From Euprymna scolopes (Eukaryota), in the NCBI GenBank assembly GCA_053919585.1, contig CM132786.1: a stretch of 64,000 nucleotides of DNA; one strand, given 5' to 3'. Every line of letters begins with the position of its first letter. The first letter of the stretch is position 1. The notes below the pieces were generated by a model, which ran no database searches, was not told where the DNA came from, and was given only the letters and a program-made list of their open reading frames with translations. Below, one piece after another: positions 691 to 63,219 of the stretch. Made by a program: the position numbers and the translations under genes.

Positions 691-729
<39 letters not shown>

Positions 730-890
730 TAGACATTAAGAGAAGATCATAGATAGATATATAAGTACCCGTTCACATACACTTTTCACGATAAAGCTAG
801 AACCCAGAATTAGATAGAATCGAGCAATTGTATAGACAACGGACAACGCCAGACCCAAAATGGATTTCGATGTACTGCATCTCATCAGTG
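730..890 (-). ncRNA. Type I hammerhead ribozyme plus 3' tail of HHR repeat family B (5' part lost in N-gap)
   Basis: Reverse strand reads ca-CUGAUGA-GAUG cagua CAUC-GAA-AUCCA uuu UGGGU-C-uggcgu: intact core, stems II and III, GUC site at 852-854. The tail matches 62610-62735 and ends in (TA)n. Confidence 0.85.
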
Positions 891-1179
891 NNNNNNNNNN
901 NNNNNNNNNNNNNNNNNNNNNNNNNNNNNNNNNNNNNNNNNNNNNNNNNNNNNNNNNNNNNNNNNNNNNNNNNNNNNNNNNNNNNNNNNNNNNNNNNNNN
1001 NNNNNNNNNNNNNNNNNNNNNNNNNNNNNNNNNNNNNNNNNNNNNNNGGGGTAATGTTTTTTCAATTATAGCATGATACACAAGATAGATAATATAAGAT
1101 AATATGAATAGTAAAATATAAAATATATTACATTTGCTCAATGATAGTCAGAGAATAAACTATGTCAATCACTTTATTG

Positions 1180-44545: not shown

Positions 44546-46735
44546 AATTAGTGACACCCGACCGTGAAATGAAATATGCATTTCCTTCTACAACCCCACA
44601 TTTCCACGCTATTTTCCCATTTAAATCGAGACCGCAGACGTCCGTCTACACCGACTCCTTGCTTACTCAAAGACCAGAAACCGGCAATTTGAAGACTTCC
44701 AAATCATTTTCGGGACTAAATCCAGCGAAAGAAGAGCATGGATTCGTCACATTCAGAAATATCTCCAGCCACCCTATCGTTAAACATCCCGGTATTCAAC
44801 CCAGCTAACATCAAATCCTGGTTCATCTAAATCCAAGCATTATCTGACGCAAAGGACACGATACACTTACGAGAAATTACCTACGGACATCGTGGAGGAG
44901 GTAATAGATTTACTCAAAACTCTACCAGAAGAAAACCCTTCCGGCCGGCTGAAGGAAGCAATTCTAAAACGAACTGGCTTATCGAACGAGTCGATGCTAC
45001 TCAATCTATTTACGCAGGTCGAACTTAGAGACTTCACTCTATCGCAGTTGTTCCGTTACATACACACCCTTTTGGGAAATAACAAGATGTCGGAGAACAT
45101 CATAAGGAGTTTGTGGCTGAATAAACTACCTACATCAACAGTGCAAATCCTCGCACCAACGGCAGAAGGAAAAGAGCCAGACAAACTGGCGGAAATAGCG
45201 GACCGGATTCACGAGAACCTCCGGACACGCCGAGTAAACTCGCTACAGCAACAGCCTACGCAACAAAAAGCTGAGCTAAAATCCACGGTCAAGAAGCTGT
45301 CCAAACAATTACAGGATTTACTGAAGGCAGATCGCTAGCGCTCACATCACAATAGGTCGCCCTATAGACGAAGAAATACCAACCGAAGTCGAAACGTGGA
45401 ACGTAACAGAGCGGATGAATACTGTTTCTACAACAGTAAATTCGGCAGTAAAGCGCGACGCTGTACCCATCCTTGTTCCTTCGGTAACAAAACGAACCAG
45501 GGAAACGAGGATGCCAGCCAGTAAAGACAACGATTGTCGCTGGACCCTCTTTAAAAGCTCGTATTTTCTATATCCGTGACAGCATCCATAATTTTCTAAT
45601 AGACACTGGCGCCGAAATAAGCGTAATTTCACCGCTGACTAGTCAGAAGATTACAACCCAATCGTATCGCTTGCAAGCACCCAACGGTACCAAGATATCC
45701 ACATTCGGGGATAAATCACTGACAATCAGTATCGGCTTGAGGCGAACATTCACGTGGATTTTTACTATAGCCGGCGTAACGACGCCCACATTAGGAGTCT
45801 ATTTCCTGGCGAAATTCAAATTGTCTGTGGACATGACCAACCATACATTAACAGGCAACCAAACGAAATTGGTGGCCAGAGGAGTCGCCACTCGATACCG
45901 GTCAACAGGTATCAGCTCAGCCCTACCTGAGGATCCATCTATTCTCGATTACTCCAAAAATAGCCGCAGCTGTCTCAGCCATTCAGGGACACGGACACAG
46001 TCAATCATAGTGCTAAACGCTACATTAAAACTACCGGACAACCAGTACACGCCACCTCAGACGTTTAAAACCGGATAAATACTGAATAGCAAAGGAAAAA
46101 TTTCAGCACATGCTACAACAGAGAATTATCCGACCCTCAAAAAGTGCATGGTCTTCTTCCTTACACATGGTGCAAAAATCGGACAGTACATCCTGGCGCC
46201 CATGCAGTGATTTCAGAAGACTAAATGCCTAAACTGCACCGGACAGATACCCTATTTCTCAGATCCACGATTTTGCAATCGGATTACAGAACGCGACAAC
46301 GTTTTCGAAGTTGGATTTAATGAAGGCATACTCCCAAGTTCCCGTAGCAGAGGAGGATATTCACAAAACAGCCTTGACCACACTATTTGGACTTTACGAA
46401 TTCACTCGCATAACCTTCGGACTTCGAAACGCTAGTCAAACTTTCCAACGTTTAATAGACGAGGTTTTAAGAGGATTGCCATTCATATTTGCATACGTGG
46501 ATGACGTCCTAATTGCTAGTAAAAACTTTGACGAACATAAACAGCACCTGGATCAAACTTTCCAGATATTATCTCACTATGACATAAAAGTAAACGTTGA
46601 AAAATGCATCAAAAGTCAACTTCCTCGGACACACGATTTACAAGGGCGGAATATCACCACTAGCCGAAAAAGTGAGTGCCATCGCTAATTCTCCGCAACC
46701 CACATCTGTTCGACAAGTCCGTCGATTTATCTTTT
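44546..46735 (+). mobile_element. Gypsy/Ty3 LTR retrotransposon internal region (gag, protease, RT), truncated, no LTRs
   Basis: PBS-like tagtgacacccgaccgtga at about 44549. Gag: LKEAILKRTG..LWLNKLP and YCFYNSKFGSKARRCTHPC. Protease: FLIDTGAEISVI. RT: DLMKAYSQVPV..FGLRNASQTFQR..AYVDDVLIAS. Confidence 0.93.
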
Positions 46736-47682
46736 CTTTCAATCTGGGGGGAATATTTTTTGCAGTCACACACACACATACACGCGCGCGCACACACACA
46801 CACACACATACACACACGCGCGCGCATTTTGCACAAAAATAAGTTCTTCCAGCAACGGCACAATTTCAAATACGCCCACACACTTTTCTCACAATCTTAT
46901 TTTTGAAGCCGGCCCAAAATGTATAAAAACGCATCAAACAGTCTTTTAGAATTCAATTAATTCAGTTCAATTCGTTCATTCAGTCACTTCAGTCTTCTTT
47001 CTTTCTTCTCGTTTATACAACACACGAGAACATGCCTTTCGTCTTCACAACATCGTCGCTGCAAAAGCCGTCATTACCATCATTACACACGCCACGCTGA
47101 CACGCAAAAATCACTTATGCACACACGCATCCAGTTCGCACATTTTCTAATTAATAACAACGAATTACCTTCCACACGTATTACTTTCCTCATGGGACTT
47201 TTAAGTAAGGCGAACTTCGCCAGATAAAACACAAACTTTAAAATAATCTCATTATTTTCACACAAGACTGTAACCTTCTAAATTACTTGATTCCACGAAG
47301 GACTTTCATCTAACATTGTAATAATAATGACTTCGAAAGAACTTTCACCGGTCGGACCTTTTTTCATTCACCTTGTTTTTGTAAAAAAGAAAATAAATGC
47401 GGTGCACTTTAAATCAGAAAGACGTGTCATTTTGCTGCATTCTTTTTTTGTTATTTTGTTTGGGGAAAAGAGATTTAATTTTACTTAAACCTCTGAACTC
47501 CTACAAAACACATTCTCGATCGTCCGTTGTTGGCCGACCCCAAACTGCTATGCGCTCGTGTTGTTTGGAGTCTCACCTTTAACTGTATAAAAGAGAAAGA
47601 GAATGATTAGAAAAAAAAAGAACGAAAGCAATGTTTTTCAATTTTGAGGACTGCAGCCAAGTTTGACCTTTAACTGTGCATC

Positions 47683-48110
47683 TGTTTTATAGGGTATCCA
47701 AAACGTAACTAAAGGGGCTTGAACTTAAATAGAGTCTTTATTTTTGATGATATGTTTCTCTAATTCTGACACTATCTGACTAAAACCTTGAGAAATTAAA
47801 AAAGAAAATTCAAACAATCTTTATTCATGAAAAATAATGTCTTTTAAATGCTGCCCATTTTCAGCTTCGCATATTTGTGCTCTTTTGAAACATTATTCAT
47901 GACGGATTGCAGAATTTCTGGATAGCGATTTAATTCTCTTATTATAGTTCTGATGTGTTCCTTCAATTCTTGCAGATTTTAAGGTTTGTTTCGATCTATT
48001 TTGTGACTTGAGCTATCTCTTATATTAAAATGCCGTCGATAAGCTCATTGAATCAAAATAAATGACCTCTGATTTCGGTAAAACAATTTAACAACTTGGG
48101 TACGTTGTTC
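47683..48110 (-). mobile_element. rosa/DD41D-like Tc1-mariner 3' remnant
   Basis: Minus strand reads LKS..RNKP.NLQELKEHIR..ILQSVMNNVSKRAQICEAENGQHLKDIIF; ta-tagggtatcc terminus. Confidence 0.65.
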
Positions 48111-48229
48111 GATGCGATACTTATTCATAATTAATTTCCAAAATAATATCTGTAAAATATCTGAAATAGCGACCAAAATAATCGATTATTGAAAAATGAC
48201 AAAAAAGTTCAACCATTCATAACATTTAA

Positions 48230-48412
48230 GGTATAAAAGCTCTCAGGTCGCACATGTCATCTGTCAAACTGTTGATTTAGCAGGTTTGACATTTCGGATA
48301 TCTGCACTAGCCTTTCGCTGCGTCCCCCACAAGTACGTGATAACTCTGGCAGAAGGTTCATTGTTCAGGAAGCCCCAAGTTCCCAAAATAGAAGCCTCCT
48401 GATTGTGCCATA
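48230..48412. repeat. Dispersed repeat copy 1 (LTR-like)
   Basis: Shares ctgtcaaactgttga, atatctgc, acaagtac, tctggcagaag and ttgtgcca with 51988-52173. Confidence 0.7.
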
Positions 48413-48959
48413 TTCGTCCCACCATTATTTTGTCACATTTGCTCTCTCTTGCTCAAATAAAATCAGAAGAAGATTGCTAACAGAATAATTAGATTTGGAT
48501 AGTCTCTTTTACTCTTTATCTTTTGTTTATAGAACAATATTTAAATTCTTTTCTCTCTTTTTTGCTTTTTTGTTGTAAAAGACATTAATCGTTCCCTTTT
48601 TAACTAGTATATTAAATTTGTTATTTTTTGAAATACATTAATCGTCCCTTCTTTTTATAGTCATTAATTCTACTTTTATAAGAAGTAGTTCTTAATTGTT
48701 CGACAATTATTTTCGGTTTCTGCCATTTATGTACCAACTTATTCGCCGTTTGAAAACCTTTTTGCTTTTTCGTCGGCTATTAACGATTCTGTAATGTGAG
48801 AAAGAGGTATTTTCAAGAATTTTCGGAATTAGAGTTTCCCAAATATTCTCTTACGTTTTTGGACTGTGGCTTGATACTGACGGGGGTGGGTTATTTTTTG
48901 TTTGTTAGAAACTACTTACACAGACGCAACTGGTAGCACAACACATAGTTTCTCTATAT

Positions 48960-51340
48960 CTCATTCCCAATCACAAACGGTTATGTTTCTACCACGTTTC
49001 CCTGACCAGCAAGAACAACACGCATCACTTTTAGATCTGCTTCTGACAACACTCGCCGATGATTGCGTTACGAATGCCCACAGCCCACTTGTAAATGCTG
49101 ATCATGTAGTGATAATAGTTGAAATCACACTAAACTCTAGAGTCAAAACGAAAAAGCCATTACTGAAAACGAGATATTATAAAAAGGCTGAATGGGAAGC
49201 CATCAGGGATCTCATCAGAGACGCCCCATGGCGAAATATCTTCTCACTTCCTGGTGAACAGTGCGCACATGAGACCACTGAGTGGTCAAAACAACAACTG
49301 AAGCACATGTTCCCACGCGGAAGTTTTATAGCAAGCACAATTCTCCCCAATGGTTTACTTCTACGTGTGCGGCTGCCATCGCGCAAAGGCAGCATGCGTA
49401 CCGCAGATTTAACCGACATAATAAATCCATTTCAAACAGACAAAAGTATATAGAAGCCAGAAATAACTTTAAGAAAGAAATAGCGACAGCTAAGAGAGAA
49501 TTTACTGAAACCACCAAAAAAACGCATCGAAGCACAGAAATTAGGAACCTGTGACTTCTGAGAAATCTACAACAGTGTAGTAAATAATTCTCTCACTATC
49601 CAACAACCATGAGGTTGTTTGCTCAGCAACTGAGAAGGCTAACATGCTTGCCAATCATTTCGCCTCCAACTTCACACTGGACCCTGCAAACCACCCCTTC
49701 CCTGGCTTTCCTTTGCGGACAGACGCCACACTAGACGATCTGAAAATCATCCCTTCTCAGGTGCATGCCATCATAAAAAATCTTGACACTTCAAAAGCAT
49801 GTAGAGCTGATCTCATCCCGGCTATGCTATTAAAAAAGTGTTCCGCCAAAGTAGCTCCAATCCTCTCCAAACTTTACCACAAATGCCTTAATGAATCTTG
49901 CTTTCCTACCTGCTGGAAAACTGCTTCTGTTGTACCAGTTTTCAAGAATTCTGGTGAAAGAACTGACCCAGTAAATTCCCGCCTAATTAGCCCCCTCCCA
50001 AAATATTTGAGTCTATTATTAGCCAAGCTCTAGTCCATCACCGTACAGATGCTAAACGTCTGACCGACCAACAATACGGATTTAGGCAAGCCCGTTCCAC
50101 GGCAGATATCCTAACTTTAATCTCTGGGCGTATATACTATTCACTTGACAAAGCAGGGGAAGGTAGAGCGGTAGCTCTAGATATATCTAAGGCTTTTGAC
50201 ACGGTATGGCATGAAGGTCTTCTCAGGAAAATCAGATCATACGTATCACTGGAAGAATACTTAACATAATTAAATCCTTCTTAGATAAGAGAAATATCCA
50301 GGTTGTCATCGATGGTCATACATCTAAACAATATGATAATTGCGGGAGTGCCCCAGGCCTTTGACCTCTATTATTCCCAATATTCATAAATTACCTCCCT
50401 GACAAAATTGTCGGTGGGATGGGTATATATGCTGATGACACCACTCTCTATAACCGACACGACAGGAAAACAAATGAACATGTATCTAGAGAAATAGCAG
50501 AAACACTAGAGGATAACCTCCAATCTGTAGTGGAATGGGGACCAAAATGGATGGTCACATTCAATGCTGCTAAGACTAAACTTGTTTCCTTCAATAACTA
50601 CAAGAAACCTCTTGCACCAATAGCAATGCCCAAATAATCTTTATCTGGAAGTACATCTTTTAAACTCCTCCGCCAAACGTTCCCAGGAAACGTGAGTTGT
50701 ATAAATTACATTGAGTGCATTACCAGAAACGCTGCGAAGAAGGTAGCTCCTCTTTACCGTGCTAGAAAGCTACTAACGCCCGAAAGTATCCTGTACCTCT
50801 ATAAGGCCACCATTCGCCCATGTATGGAGTATTGTTATATTTGGGATGGTGCATCTGCTGCTAGTCTCTCACTCCTAGACAGGGTTCAAAAAAGAGTCGC
50901 CAACCTAATAGGTCCTGAACTATCATCTAAGCTTCAGCCTCTGTCCCATCGACGAAATGTAGCATCCTTCTGCCTGTTCTACAAGTATGTCACTGGGGAA
51001 TGCTCTGACGAACTTCAAGCACTTGTGCTTCCTCGACGTAAATACCCCCGAAAATCCCCACAAGCAGCAAAATCCTACCCCTTCACAGTTTAGATCCCTA
51101 GATGTAAGAGTGACTTCTACTTCAGTAGTTTCTTCCTGAGAACCGCTGAACTTTGGAATTCCCTTCCGAGTTCATGCTTCCCCAACTGTACTGATATGCA
51201 GAAGTTCATGTGTAACGTGAACCGACATCTTGCTGCCCAACTCCCCACATAGTACCCCTGTAGCTTATGTCCCTGATAGTAGCCCCCTACAGAAAATTGG
51301 CAATGTGCCTTATTTGGGGTGAAATTGCAATAAAAAAAAT
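48960..51340 (+). mobile_element. CR1/Jockey-group LINE ORF2 (end of APE, RT, C-terminus) with 3' UTR; most complete copy in the window
   Basis: RFPD..SLLDLLLT..DH (APE end), WKTASVVPVFKN.GERTDP, QYGFRQARST, ALDISKAFD.VWH, YADD, LYKATIRPCMEY, LQPLSHRR, then aataaaaaaa tail. Confidence 0.93.
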
Positions 51341-62403: not shown

Positions 62404-62566
62404 CAGGTCGTCGCACTCATGAAGTGTGCAATACTGACGACCTAACCATATGGGCCACGGCGCAATCTATTGGCACTGCCTCGATTTTTAAATTCTTATA
62501 TATATATATATTTTTATCTAGTTCTACATTCTACGATGTGACAAGCAACGCGTCCTGTCTCAGAGC

Positions 62567-62615
62567 ACGTCACTGATGAGATGCAATACATCGAAACCCA
62601 CTTTAGGTCTGGCAC
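62567..62615 (+). ncRNA. Type I hammerhead ribozyme (family B)
   Basis: Stem I gtca/tggc; CUGAUGA 62573-79; stem II gatg/catc; GAAA; stem III accca/taggt (one mismatch); GUC 62607-09. Confidence 0.85.
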
Positions 62616-63058
62616 TGTCCGTTGTCGATGCAATTGCTCGATTCTATCTAATTCTAGGTTCTAGCTTTATCGTGAAAGGTGTATGTGAACGGGTATTTGT
62701 ATATCTATCTATAATCTCCTCTTAATGTCTAATATGTGTAGAAAAGGCGGTTCATCATTCGGAGGGACGTGCTGTCCCTCAACAAATAGGTTGTTCCGAA
62801 ATCGTGTCTGCGTAGTCGGCTAATTTCAGTTAATGTTTGTAGATGTGATATCTACCGCCTGCATACCAGCAGCAACTATCTTAGTTGTATAGGACGCGTT
62901 GCTTGTCACATCGTAGAATGTAGAACTAGATGAAAAAAAATCTATATAAGAATTTAAAAATCGAGGCATATCAATAGATTGCGCCGTAGCCCATATGGTT
63001 AGGTCGTCAGTATTGCACACTTCATGAGTGCAACGACCTGGGTTCACGCCTATGTCGC

Positions 63059-63107
63059 ACGTAACTGATGAGATGCAGTACATCGAAACCCACTTTGGGT
63101 CGGGCGT
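63059..63107 (+). ncRNA. Type I hammerhead ribozyme (family B), stem I weakened
   Basis: CUGAUGA 63065-71; stem II gatg/catc; perfect stem III accca-ctt-tgggt; GUC 63099-101. Stem I acgtaa/gggcgt has two core-proximal mismatches. Confidence 0.8.
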
Positions 63108-63167
63108 TGTCCGTTGTCGATTTAATTGCTCAATTCTATCTAATTCTGAAAGGTGTATGTGAAACGG

Positions 63168-63219
<52 letters not shown>

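What the first reader, a model, noticed from the sequence alone, without database searches (positions are those of the whole stretch)
62404..63170. Tandem hammerhead 'retrozyme' with an internal tRNA-like Pol III promoter: a candidate self-cleaving, circularising 492-nt RNA element
Seen in sequence: two type I HHRs in direct orientation (GUC sites ending at 62609 and 63101) delimit a 492-nt monomer. Just upstream of the second HHR is a tRNA-like head: A box 62987-98, B-box-like 63040-50, and an extended hairpin aggtcg..ttgcac/gtgcaa..cgacct between them. A third family copy lies at 730-890 on the minus strand; the consensus of the three restores a 6-bp stem I (acgtca/tggcgt). Established: animal non-LTR retrozymes are tandem type I HHR repeats that self-process to monomers and circles; Penelope-like elements carry HHRs; Schistosoma SM-alpha combines HHRs with Pol III promoter elements. 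Inference: this is a non-autonomous retroelement carrying its own Pol III promoter, so cleaved or circular monomers could regenerate transcribable copies, probably using a Penelope RT in trans. Whether this family is already catalogued cannot be determined here.
Basis: partly seen in the sequence, partly recalled or inferred. Interest (0 to 1): 0.9.

Follow-up and report, generated by a model that had tools for sequence, protein, structure and literature searches.

The report
Decayed hammerhead-ribozyme retroelement, Penelope-style insertion
This is an old, mutated copy of a small non-coding jumping element that carries a self-cutting hammerhead RNA motif and was inserted into a (TA)n microsatellite in the manner of Penelope-like retrotransposons. 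The kind is known, but other copies in this genome record that the ribozyme really cut its RNA in vivo.

Summary
Two hammerhead (HHR) cores lie 492 nt apart, with cleavage after 62609 and 63101, and a third copy lies at 726-890 (-).

The locus is one decayed insertion of a family with several thousand copies. It consists of a 153-nt inverted piece, a 1.26-unit arm and (TA)n. Across the genome the arms have a fixed 3' end in (TA)n and variable 5' ends. They reach up to 1.76 units, and in 26 of 40 loci sampled by position they form head-to-head inverted pairs. These are the published hallmarks of Penelope-like element (PLE) insertion.

The family's majority HHR folds at minimum free energy into the canonical three-way junction. 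Both window copies carry stem mutations.

New here: insertion 5' ends pile up exactly at the first base after the cleavage site (24, against 0 and 1 at control positions). RNA cut by the ribozyme was therefore reverse-transcribed in vivo.

A second sharp 5' end sits at the edge of the tRNA-like head (10 at 62987-equivalent, 0 seven bases upstream). This is compatible with a Pol III start or a processing site but does not prove either. No tRNA caller accepts the head. Circles were not shown.

The scan has noted sister families in this genome before. Verdict: a new member of a known kind, close to Sm-alpha and PLE-dependent retrozymes.

The parts
62404..62556 (-). Inverted, truncated arm. It is the reverse complement of unit positions equivalent to 62891-63040 (tRNA-like head, hairpin and upstream spacer). 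It lacks its own HHR and 3' end.
   Evidence: Inverted repeats I1/I2, 97% and 93% complementary. BLAST to the unit.
62549..63168 (+). Main arm of 1.26 units. It joins the inverted piece through a CGCGYCCT microhomology at 62549-62556. Its last ~40 nt of family sequence are replaced by (TA)n.
   Evidence: The family 3' end is taken.
62560..62621 (+). HHR1. Core at 62573-62609, cleavage after C62609. Compared with the family majority, stem III is weakened (A62605) and stem I has two broken pairs (A62614, C62615).
   Evidence: (HH9, 23.6 bits). Majority letters.
62610..63101 (+). The 492-nt unit between the two cleavage sites. No ORF. It folds modestly better than shuffled sequence.
   Evidence: spacing 492. 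(z = -2.17).
62976..63056 (+). tRNA-like head: A-box-like motif 62987-62998, extended hairpin 63001-63039, B-box-like GGTTCACGCC 63041-63050. Family arms show a sharp 5'-end hot spot at the position equivalent to 62987/62988.
   Evidence: (ARAGORN only at 80% threshold).
63049..63113 (+). HHR2. Core at 63065-63101, cleavage after C63101. Stems II and III are intact. The first two stem I pairs are broken (A63063, G63102), and there is a 3-nt deletion in distal stem I.
   Evidence: (17.6 bits).
63169..63218 (.). (TA)n microsatellite at the 3' end of the arm. This is the family's usual insertion context.
726..890 (-). Third family copy. It has the HHR core (888-852) through to the family 3' end, followed by (TA)n. 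Its 5' side is cut by an N run.

Best explanation
Window 62404-63218 is one old insertion of a high-copy, non-coding retroelement family with a 492-nt unit. The unit carries a canonical type I hammerhead ribozyme next to a tRNA-like segment.

The family spreads through RNA. Copies are made by target-primed reverse transcription at (TA)n microsatellites, in the style of Penelope-like elements. This gives a fixed 3' end and 5' truncation. It also gives arms longer than one unit (a pseudo-LTR holding a second HHR) and an inverted, truncated copy joined head-to-head.

The reverse transcriptase is inferred to come in trans from the genome's abundant RT + GIY-YIG Penelope-like elements. In the family's active period the hammerhead cut the RNA in vivo, and cut RNAs were themselves copied into DNA. 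The window copy has since mutated and is probably inactive.

Shown: the anatomy, the family-wide architecture, the canonical fold of the majority HHR, and the 5'-end footprints.

Inferred: a PLE enzyme as the mobiliser, the (UA)n flank as the priming aid, and the inactivity of this copy.
For: Abundance:
- 2678 first-look matches.
- Exact 28-mers: 1435, 1249, 1727.
- 818 copies of the 3' end plus TATATAT.

Architecture:
- In 40 loci chosen by position rather than score, 26 are abutting (gap of at most 30 nt) head-to-head pairs of 5'-truncated arms with their 3' ends outward. A few more carry an inverted piece in a looser arrangement.
- Arm lengths run from 35 to 867 nt.
- Of 113 3' ends, 64 are followed by (TA)n and 34 run on into the next unit.
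- 5' flanks of solo arms are often (TA)n too.
- These are the PLE hallmarks listed in PMC8557442. Opposite-strand HHR pairs 100-700 bp apart were noted for PLEs in PMC4209133.

The hammerhead:
- A 65-nt majority HHR is identical in 22 copies in my loci. Its MFE structure (-19.7 kcal/mol) is the three-way junction with an internally looped stem I.
- Stem II covaries across sister families: GATG/CATC, GCTG/CAGC, GTTG/CAAC, GCGG/CCGC.

In vivo cleavage:
- The test counts arms that start at a given base with all 5 upstream bases differing from the family sequence.
- Counts are 0 at 13 nt before the cleavage site, 24 at the first base after it, 13 at +3, 6 at +6 and 1 at +12.
- The control position has more continuous copies than the cleavage site (1727 against 1249).

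Possible partner:
- 15,395 GIY-YIG candidates, many with 804-808-aa open frames.
- One sampled ORF has RVT_1 plus GIY-YIG.
Against: - No sequence similarity was found between the family's 3' end and the 3' UTR of the one abundant PLE family sampled. The partner is therefore not identified.
- No canonical HHR was seen within 1.5 kb of those PLE endonuclease domains with my strict pattern.
- The left flank of the window copy is not (TA)n, and its inverted piece lacks a 3' end. This copy is atypical or was rearranged later.
- Rfam hammerhead models stay below their gathering score.
- A few of the 24 footprint hits could be internal-deletion variants rather than true 5' ends.
Confidence: 0.8

Rival explanations
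1. The tRNA-like head is an internal Pol III promoter, so each unit transcribes itself. The RNA starts at the head, and the hammerhead then trims it. This adds to the best explanation rather than excluding it.
For: - A-box-like and B-box-like motifs sit at tRNA-like spacing.
- Three unrelated HHR families found by chance in the flanks carry clearer tRNA-like heads (B box GGTTCGATCC) in the same place, upstream of the HHR.
- There is a sharp 5'-end hot spot at the head's edge: 0 at -7, 1 at -3, 10 at the first A-box base, 3 at +1, against 439 continuous copies.
- That hot spot lies 2 nt before the cloverleaf register ARAGORN gives at a relaxed threshold and 54 nt before the B-box-like motif.
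- There is no T4+ run on the sense strand.
Against: - ARAGORN at default thresholds and the Rfam tRNA model find nothing.
- Relaxed ARAGORN gives inconsistent registers amid hundreds of chance hits.
- The B-box-like motif lacks the A58-equivalent base.
- The lack of T4 runs is not significant once dinucleotide content is kept (P = 0.16-0.31).
It could equally be an RNase P-type processing site or a joining preference.
- Many arms extend upstream of the head.
- Poly(A) RNA-seq shows only low, two-stranded coverage that tracks copy number.
Confidence: 0.4
2. Retrozyme cycle through circles. Cleaved 492-nt monomers are ligated into circular RNA, and rolling-circle reverse transcription of the circles makes the arms that are longer than one unit.
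For: - Arms of up to 1.76 units, with seamless unit-to-unit junctions.
- The 3' priming site lies inside the unit, 126 nt after the cleavage site, which a circle would allow.
- Animal retrozyme RNAs are circularised by a tRNA ligase in vitro (PMC7229834).
- One 'goes back 491' joint was seen in a run of uncertain type.
Against: - No RNA evidence: poly(A) runs show no ends at the cleavage sites and no back-joints.
- No rRNA-depleted run was listed.
- Partial tandems are formed by autonomous PLEs as well, and these are not circular (PMC8557442).
- The unit folds only modestly better than shuffled sequence (z = -2.17), not like a viroid-type rod.
- The single back-joint can come from genomic tandem copies.
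Confidence: 0.3
3. The unit is only a solo pseudo-LTR or terminal fragment of a larger autonomous Penelope-like element, not an element of its own.
For: HHRs normally lie in PLE pseudo-LTRs (PMC4209133; PMC8557442). The genome is full of PLEs.
Against: - The unit closes on itself at 492 nt. 34 junctions run from the 3' end straight into the unit start.
- No arm in 70 loci holds an ORF or extra internal sequence.
- The sampled PLE 3' regions share nothing with the family.
Confidence: 0.07
4. A foldback or MITE-type DNA transposon with long terminal inverted repeats that targets TA, or a satellite that spread by recombination.
For: Head-to-head inverted arms with identical outer ends in TA-rich targets resemble terminal inverted repeats.
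Against: - Inner junctions differ from copy to copy and the two arms are unequal. Solo arms and arms longer than one unit are also present.
- 5' ends pile up at the ribozyme cleavage site, which makes sense only for an RNA intermediate.
- Copies are dispersed over all large contigs.
Confidence: 0.03

Closest known systems
Sm-alpha / Sj-alpha SINE-like elements of schistosomes (Ferbeyre et al. 1998; Laha et al. 2000)
   Same: A short non-coding retroelement with thousands of copies and a canonical type I hammerhead with an internally looped stem I. It is described as SINE-like (PMC8490949). From my own knowledge, not read here, Sm-alpha also carries tRNA-type A and B boxes upstream of the ribozyme.
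   Different: - The host phylum differs (mollusc by run labels) and there is no sequence relationship.
- The unit is 492 nt, against about 335 nt for Sm-alpha.
- Here the insertion style is documented as PLE-type, with (TA)n targets and head-to-head arms.
- The head of this family is much less tRNA-like.
Animal non-LTR retrozymes (Cervera & de la Pena 2020, PMC7229834; Li, Clavereau & Pollet 2026 preprint, 10.64898/2026.07.22.740005)
   Same: Non-autonomous, no ORF, type I HHR once per unit, units of a few hundred nt. They are proposed to depend on PLEs. Mussels are among the described hosts.
   Different: - Retrozymes are defined by tandem arrays and by abundant circular RNA.
- This family is mostly made of dispersed, 5'-truncated, inverted pairs, and no circle has been shown.
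- It has a fixed 3' end inside the unit and a tRNA-like segment, neither of which is reported for retrozymes (no 'tRNA' promoter or 'Pol III').
Penelope-like elements and their pseudo-LTR hammerheads (PMC4209133; PMC8557442)
   Same: 5' truncation, partial tandems, an adjacent inverted 5'-truncated copy, a microsatellite ((TA)n) insertion bias, and an HHR in the repeated part.
   Different: - There is no RT/GIY-YIG ORF.
- The HHR is a full canonical motif with a 4-5-bp stem III, not the minimal dimer-dependent variant typical of metazoan PLEs.
- No sequence is shared with the PLE family sampled here.

Membership tests
Hammerhead ribozyme, type I | Conserved core: C3-A9 (CUGAUGA), G12-A14 plus A15.1 (GAAA), U16.1, H17 | tested here: met
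   All core letters are present in both window copies, the third copy and the family majority.
Hammerhead ribozyme, type I | Three helices around the core, with helix I open | tested here: met
   The MFE of the majority 65-mer is the three-way junction. Stem II covaries across sister families. The window copies have weakened stems I and III.
Hammerhead ribozyme, type I | Rfam gathering score | tested here: not met
   HH9 scores 23.6 and 17.6 bits against a cut-off of 52. Sister-family HHRs also score low.
Hammerhead ribozyme, type I | Self-cleavage 3' of H17 | tested here: inconclusive
   There is no biochemistry. The indirect evidence is strong for the family: 24 arms start exactly at position 1.1, against 0 and 1 at control positions.
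Animal non-LTR retrozyme | Tandem arrays of HHR-bearing units | tested here: not met
   The window holds 1.26 units. The largest sampled arm is 1.76 units and most arms are below 1 unit.
Animal non-LTR retrozyme | Accumulates as small circular RNA | tested here: inconclusive
   Only poly(A) libraries could be laid, and they gave no circle signal. No rRNA-depleted run was listed.
PLE-mobilised non-autonomous element | 5' truncation, partial tandem (pseudo-LTR), adjacent inverted 5'-truncated copy | tested here: met
   set against the description in PMC8557442.
PLE-mobilised non-autonomous element | Microsatellite insertion bias | tested here: met
   (TA)n lies at 64 of 79 terminal 3' ends and at many 5' flanks.
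PLE-mobilised non-autonomous element | Shares its 3' end with an autonomous PLE of the same genome | tested here: inconclusive
   One abundant PLE family was sampled (12 loci) and showed no similarity. Other PLE families were not examined.
tRNA-derived SINE (Pol III type 2 promoter) | Recognisable tRNA-derived head | tested here: not met
   ARAGORN at default thresholds gives 0 calls. The Rfam tRNA model gives no hit at E<10 on 1 kb. There are only relaxed-threshold hits, with inconsistent registers.
tRNA-derived SINE (Pol III type 2 promoter) | A and B boxes | tested here: inconclusive
   The A-box-like TRGCNNA..GG motif is met. The B-box-like GGTTCGCGCC (GGTTCACGCC in the window) misses the A58-equivalent base.
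tRNA-derived SINE (Pol III type 2 promoter) | Copies begin at a defined transcription start at the head | tested here: inconclusive
There is a sharp 5'-end hot spot at the 62987/62988-equivalent position (10 + 3, against 0 and 1 upstream).

The most novel reading that the evidence does not exclude
This is a Penelope-dependent 'ribozyme SINE'. The tRNA-like head drives, or defines by processing, an RNA that starts at the 62987/62988-equivalent base. The hammerhead cuts that RNA 115 nt downstream. Both RNA ends are fossilised as 5' ends of thousands of (TA)n insertions. Together with sister families that have clearer tRNA heads, this would be a mollusc system uniting a Pol III-type head, an active HHR and PLE-type integration. 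In such a system, insertion junctions would give a genome-wide read-out of ribozyme activity in the germ line.
Probability: 0.35. Interest if true: 0.6.

Novelty: new member of a known kind. Interest (0 to 1): 0.42.

Why it matters
What hammerheads do for Penelope-like and retrozyme elements is still open. The papers read here call the mechanism unresolved and report low in vitro activity for PLE hammerheads.

This family gives a cheap, sequence-only read-out. Insertion 5' ends mark the exact ribozyme cleavage site, so cleaved RNA was a template in vivo. A second discrete end marks the edge of the tRNA-like head.

This makes the family, and its sister families in the same genome, a practical system for testing three things:
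- whether the head is a Pol III promoter or a processing signal;
- whether circles are intermediates;
- how PLE enzymes build inverted and tandem copies, possibly at hairpins.

The window copy itself is an ordinary fossil.

Tried and rejected
- Rfam at gathering score on the whole window found nothing. At relaxed E-values on 52 kb of loci it returned only (TA)n hairpin noise.
- Rfam does not call tRNA even on the clearer heads of the sister families. Its silence on this head therefore carries little weight.
- ARAGORN at 70-80% thresholds gave 354-615 mostly spurious calls.
- The absence of T4+ Pol III terminators on the sense strand looked significant with simple shuffles (P = 0.025). It was not significant with a first-order Markov model, so I dropped it as evidence.
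- BLAST of the family against 12 PLE loci gave only AT-rich chance hits.
- ORFs in the flanks were unrelated: Tc1/mariner transposases, LINE RT, and two with no Pfam hit.
- Poly(A) RNA-seq gave 63-75 reads on both strands, half of them running into unrelated sequence, with no pile-up of ends.
- A search for rRNA-depleted runs listed none.
The architecture sample therefore stayed at 40 unbiased loci.
- 5'-end counts at the +2 and +4 positions of the head were contaminated by internal-deletion variants.
- The apparent 5'-end cluster at 'q146' is an artefact of my reference being cut at the window's own junction.
Full report
**Coordinates.** I use window positions. For the family I also use q = window position minus 62403, so the first base after the HHR1 cleavage site (62610) is q207, and q+492 is the same unit position one repeat later.

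Yes. Reading the sequence and a motif scan give three complete hammerhead cores:
- 62573-62609 (+)
- 63065-63101 (+)
- 888-852 (-)

Each core has CTGATGA, a 4-bp stem II, GAAA, a short stem III and GTC. The repeat finder gives a 91-nt direct repeat, 90% identical, at a spacing of exactly 492.

Rfam does not reach its curated threshold anywhere in the window. In a 1-kb scan the two sites are the only ribozyme hits: Hammerhead_HH9 at 23.6 bits (E = 0.0033) and 17.6 bits, against a gathering score of 52.

The motif is not a chance match. A 28-nt pattern across the core occurs 1435 times in the 5.9-Gb genome, and its reversed control occurs 0 times.

The stretch given as the start of the finding is therefore an inverted partial copy of the 'tRNA-like head' and its upstream spacer.

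**2. What the family looks like.**

A search of the window's own genome gave 2678 first-look candidates, and I fetched 30 loci from it. Those loci were chosen by score. I therefore also fetched 20 loci listed by position from the HHR pattern and 20 from a pattern for the 3' end. I then mapped every arm onto a trimer of the unit. The picture is consistent.

- **Fixed 3' end.** Every arm ends at the same place, q about 310-337 (...CTCTTAATGTCTAATAT). Of 113 such ends, 64 are followed by (TA)n and 34 run straight on into the start of the next unit.
- **Variable 5' end.** Arm lengths run from 35 to 867 nt, which is up to 1.76 units.
- **Head-to-head pairs.** In 26 of the 40 position-sampled loci, two arms abut (gap of at most 30 nt) head-to-head on opposite strands, with both 3' ends pointing outward. 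A few more carry an inverted piece in a looser arrangement.
- **(TA)n on both sides.** The 5' flanks of solo arms are often (TA)n as well, so (TA)n is the target and not only a tail.
- **No coding capacity.** No arm contains an ORF or extra internal sequence. The unit closes on itself at 492 nt.
- **Age.** Copies of the 3' segment are on average 95.3% identical to the column majority and 92% identical to each other.

Exact 28-mers fall from 1727 in the 3' module, to 1249-1435 at the HHR, to 439 at the head. That is the gradient expected from 5' truncation. At about 5% divergence per site only about a quarter of copies keep a given 28-mer intact. By inference, several thousand arms exist.

High 5' truncation, partial tandems that form a pseudo-LTR, an inverted 5'-truncated copy adjacent at the 5' end, and a microsatellite ((TA)n) bias are the structural hallmarks of Penelope-like elements as described by Craig et al. 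(PMC8557442). Cervera and de la Pena had already noticed HHR pairs 100-700 bp apart on opposite strands (PMC4209133).

The genome has the enzymes. A GIY-YIG profile search gave 15,395 candidates, many inside open frames of 804-808 aa and often in inverted pairs. One sampled ORF carries RVT_1 plus a C-terminal GIY-YIG domain.

I could not link the family to a particular partner. The 3' UTR of the abundant PLE family I sampled shares nothing with it.

**3. The window copy.**

From left to right the locus reads:
- an unrelated flank;
- an inverted piece, 62404-62556 (unit q488-637 only, with no HHR and no 3' end);
- a junction with a CGCGYCCT microhomology;
- a plus-strand arm, 62549-63168, of 1.26 units with two HHRs;
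- (TA)n at 63169-63218, which has replaced the last ~40 nt of family sequence.

Both ribozymes differ from the family majority in their stems (majority letters). HHR1 has A62605 in stem III and A62614/C62615 in stem I. HHR2 has A63063 and G63102, which break the two pairs nearest the cleavage site, plus a 3-nt deletion further out. The two repeats of this one arm differ by about 10%. That fits two sequences that were identical at insertion and have since aged by about 5% each. This copy is a fossil.

**4. Is the hammerhead a working design?**

A 65-nt majority form is identical in 22 copies within my 70 loci. Its minimum-free-energy structure (-19.7 kcal/mol) is exactly the hammerhead three-way junction:
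- stem I of 6 bp, a 2x2 internal loop, then 4 more pairs;
- stem II of 4 bp;
- stem III of 4-5 bp.

An internally looped stem I opposite loop II is the layout of fast natural type I hammerheads (review PMC6155905).

Three other HHR families turned up by chance in the flanks. Their stem II covaries with this one: GATG/CATC, GCTG/CAGC, GTTG/CAAC, GCGG/CCGC.

**5. Evidence that it cut in vivo.**

If cleaved RNA is reverse-transcribed to its end, the DNA copy begins at the first base after GUC. I counted, genome-wide, arms whose family sequence begins at a chosen base. I required all five preceding bases to differ from the continuous family sequence, which excludes point-mutated continuous copies.

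| Start position | Relation to cleavage site | Arms |
|---|---|---|
| q194 | 13 nt before | 0 |
| q207 | first base after the cut | 24 |
| q210 | +3 | 13 |
| q213 | +6 | 6 |
| q219 | +12 | 1 |

Continuous copies number 1249 at the site and 1727 at the q219 control, so the control had more chances to score.

The 24 upstream pentamers are diverse, which indicates independent events. An independent list of arms that abut (TA)n shows 12 of 14 distinct 5' ends within q209-214. Arms of about 126-131 nt (L043, L062) and of about 1.2 units (L019, L039, L066) that begin there are visible directly.

A sharp onset exactly at the scissile bond, nothing upstream and a short downstream tail is what a discrete RNA 5' end predicts. 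A reverse-transcriptase stall at the base of a helix would lie 3' of stem I, not at position 1.1.

I conclude that the family's hammerhead cleaved in vivo and that cleaved RNA served as a template. After correcting for the stringency of the five-base filter (about 0.24), this class makes up a few percent of arms.

**6. The tRNA-like head.**

Evidence against it:
- ARAGORN finds no tRNA in the window or in any locus at default settings.
- Rfam's tRNA model gives no hit at E<10 on 1 kb.
- The B-box-like motif (majority GGTTCGCGCC) lacks the A58-equivalent base.
- The absence of T4 terminators is not significant once dinucleotide content is kept.

Evidence for it:
- The three sister families carry much clearer heads, with GGTTCGATCC-type B boxes, in the same position upstream of their HHRs. 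One of these heads shares the GCCATAT..G and GGGTT.CG..CCT blocks with this family. Rfam does not call those heads tRNA either, so its silence is weak evidence.
- The 5'-end test gives a second sharp hot spot.

| Start position | Arms | Note |
|---|---|---|
| q581 | 1 | |
| q584 | 10 | |
| q585 | 3 | |
| q586 | 7 | about 3 genuine; the rest are internal-deletion variants |
| q588 | 6 | about 3 look genuine; the rest are internal-deletion variants |
| q598 | 2 | |

These counts stand against 439 continuous copies.

Position q584/585 corresponds to window 62987/62988.

A discrete RNA 5' end at the edge of the tRNA-like fold fits a Pol III start. It equally fits RNase P-type processing, or a joining preference next to the ATAT of CCATATGG. 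I rate a working Pol III promoter at about 0.4.

**7. Circles.**

I could not test these properly. Two poly(A) RNA-seq runs of the species gave 63 and 75 family reads out of 10-12 million read. The reads lie on both strands, half run on into unrelated sequence, and coverage follows genomic copy number. No ends pile up at the cleavage sites. That pattern is background read-through.

Poly(A) selection removes circles and Pol III products, and no rRNA-depleted run was listed. Arms longer than one unit are compatible with rolling-circle copying. They are also what autonomous, linear PLEs produce. The unit folds only modestly better than shuffled sequence (z = -2.17).

**8. Mechanism proposed.**

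Shown:
- an RNA intermediate;
- PLE-type architecture;
- (TA)n targets;
- in vivo HHR cleavage;
- two discrete RNA 5' ends.

Inferred:
- Copies are transcribed together with their (TA)n flank.
- The (UA)n stretch pairs with a nicked (TA)n target and primes reverse transcription by a PLE RT/GIY-YIG enzyme supplied in trans.
- cDNA synthesis ends in one of three ways: it runs to an RNA 5' end (the HHR cut or the head edge), it stops early, or it switches template.
- Template switching would yield the upstream partial unit and the inverted arm.

Junctions in inverted pairs often fall at the two hairpins of the unit, q471-485 and q598-637. L057 is a perfect snap-back at the larger hairpin. This hints at hairpin-primed formation of the inverted arm, but the enrichment is weak in my sample.

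**9. Comparison with what is known, and novelty.**

The design of a short non-coding retroelement with a canonical type I HHR, described as SINE-like, is known from schistosome Sm-alpha (PMC8490949). From my own knowledge, Sm-alpha also has Pol III boxes; I did not read that here.

HHR units that depend on PLEs are the current reading of animal retrozymes (PMC7229834; preprint 10.64898/2026.07.22.740005). A full-text search found no description for cephalopods or this lineage beyond a count of Rfam hammerheads in a squid genome.

The scan itself has already flagged several sister families in other windows of this same genome. Its follow-up notes reached the same class. I formed the PLE reading before seeing those notes, and I confirmed the existence of sister families independently.

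The finding is therefore a new member of a known kind, seen here in a decayed copy. What I add is the junction-based evidence for in vivo cleavage and for a discrete RNA end at the head.

Noticed in passing
L046:1338-1475 (+), L066:787-925 (+), L036:2569-2735 (-): Three other hammerhead families lie in the flanks of fetched loci. Each has a clearer tRNA-like head (B box GGTTCGATCC or GGTTTCGATCC) about 35-40 nt upstream of a canonical HHR. In two of them the cleavage site lies only a few bases before (TA)n.
   Followed up: partly
G000 genome-wide; for example C12:14496712-14504984 and loci L072-L082: A very abundant, young-looking Penelope-like element: 15,395 GIY-YIG candidates, many open frames of 804-808 aa, near-identical scores, and frequent inverted pairs. 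Its 3' UTR holds A-runs and no canonical HHR by my strict pattern.
   Followed up: partly
window 891-1046: An N run directly abuts the third family copy, just 5' of its HHR. Craig et al. note that complex inverted and tandem PLE-type insertions cause assembly problems. I left the gap untouched.
   Followed up: no
family unit q471-485 and q598-637 (window 62874-62888 and 63001-63039): Junctions between head-to-head arms often fall at these two hairpins. L057 is an exact snap-back at the larger one. This hints that inverted arms arise by hairpin-primed synthesis. The enrichment is only about 2-fold in about 75 arms.
   Followed up: partly
window 44784-49450 (+): Open frames of 184-196 aa include a retropepsin-like LIDTGAEISVI motif, which suggests an LTR-retrotransposon remnant.
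   Followed up: no
L023:129-1187 (+), L058:490-1212 (+): Tc1/mariner-type transposase ORFs (HTH_SB, HTH_Tnp_Tc3_2, DDE_3) sit next to family copies.
   Followed up: yes
L060 and L061 (G000:C1:138778263 and 138785124): Two identical head-to-head insertions lie 6.9 kb apart. This looks like a local segmental duplication that carried the element, not two separate insertions.
   Followed up: no
L012:2518-3195 (+), L045:1286-1900 (-): Open frames of 226 and 205 aa contain an LYRDDGL-like and an FLDITL-like motif. These are reminiscent of reverse-transcriptase motifs, but there is no Pfam hit at E<0.01.
   Followed up: partly
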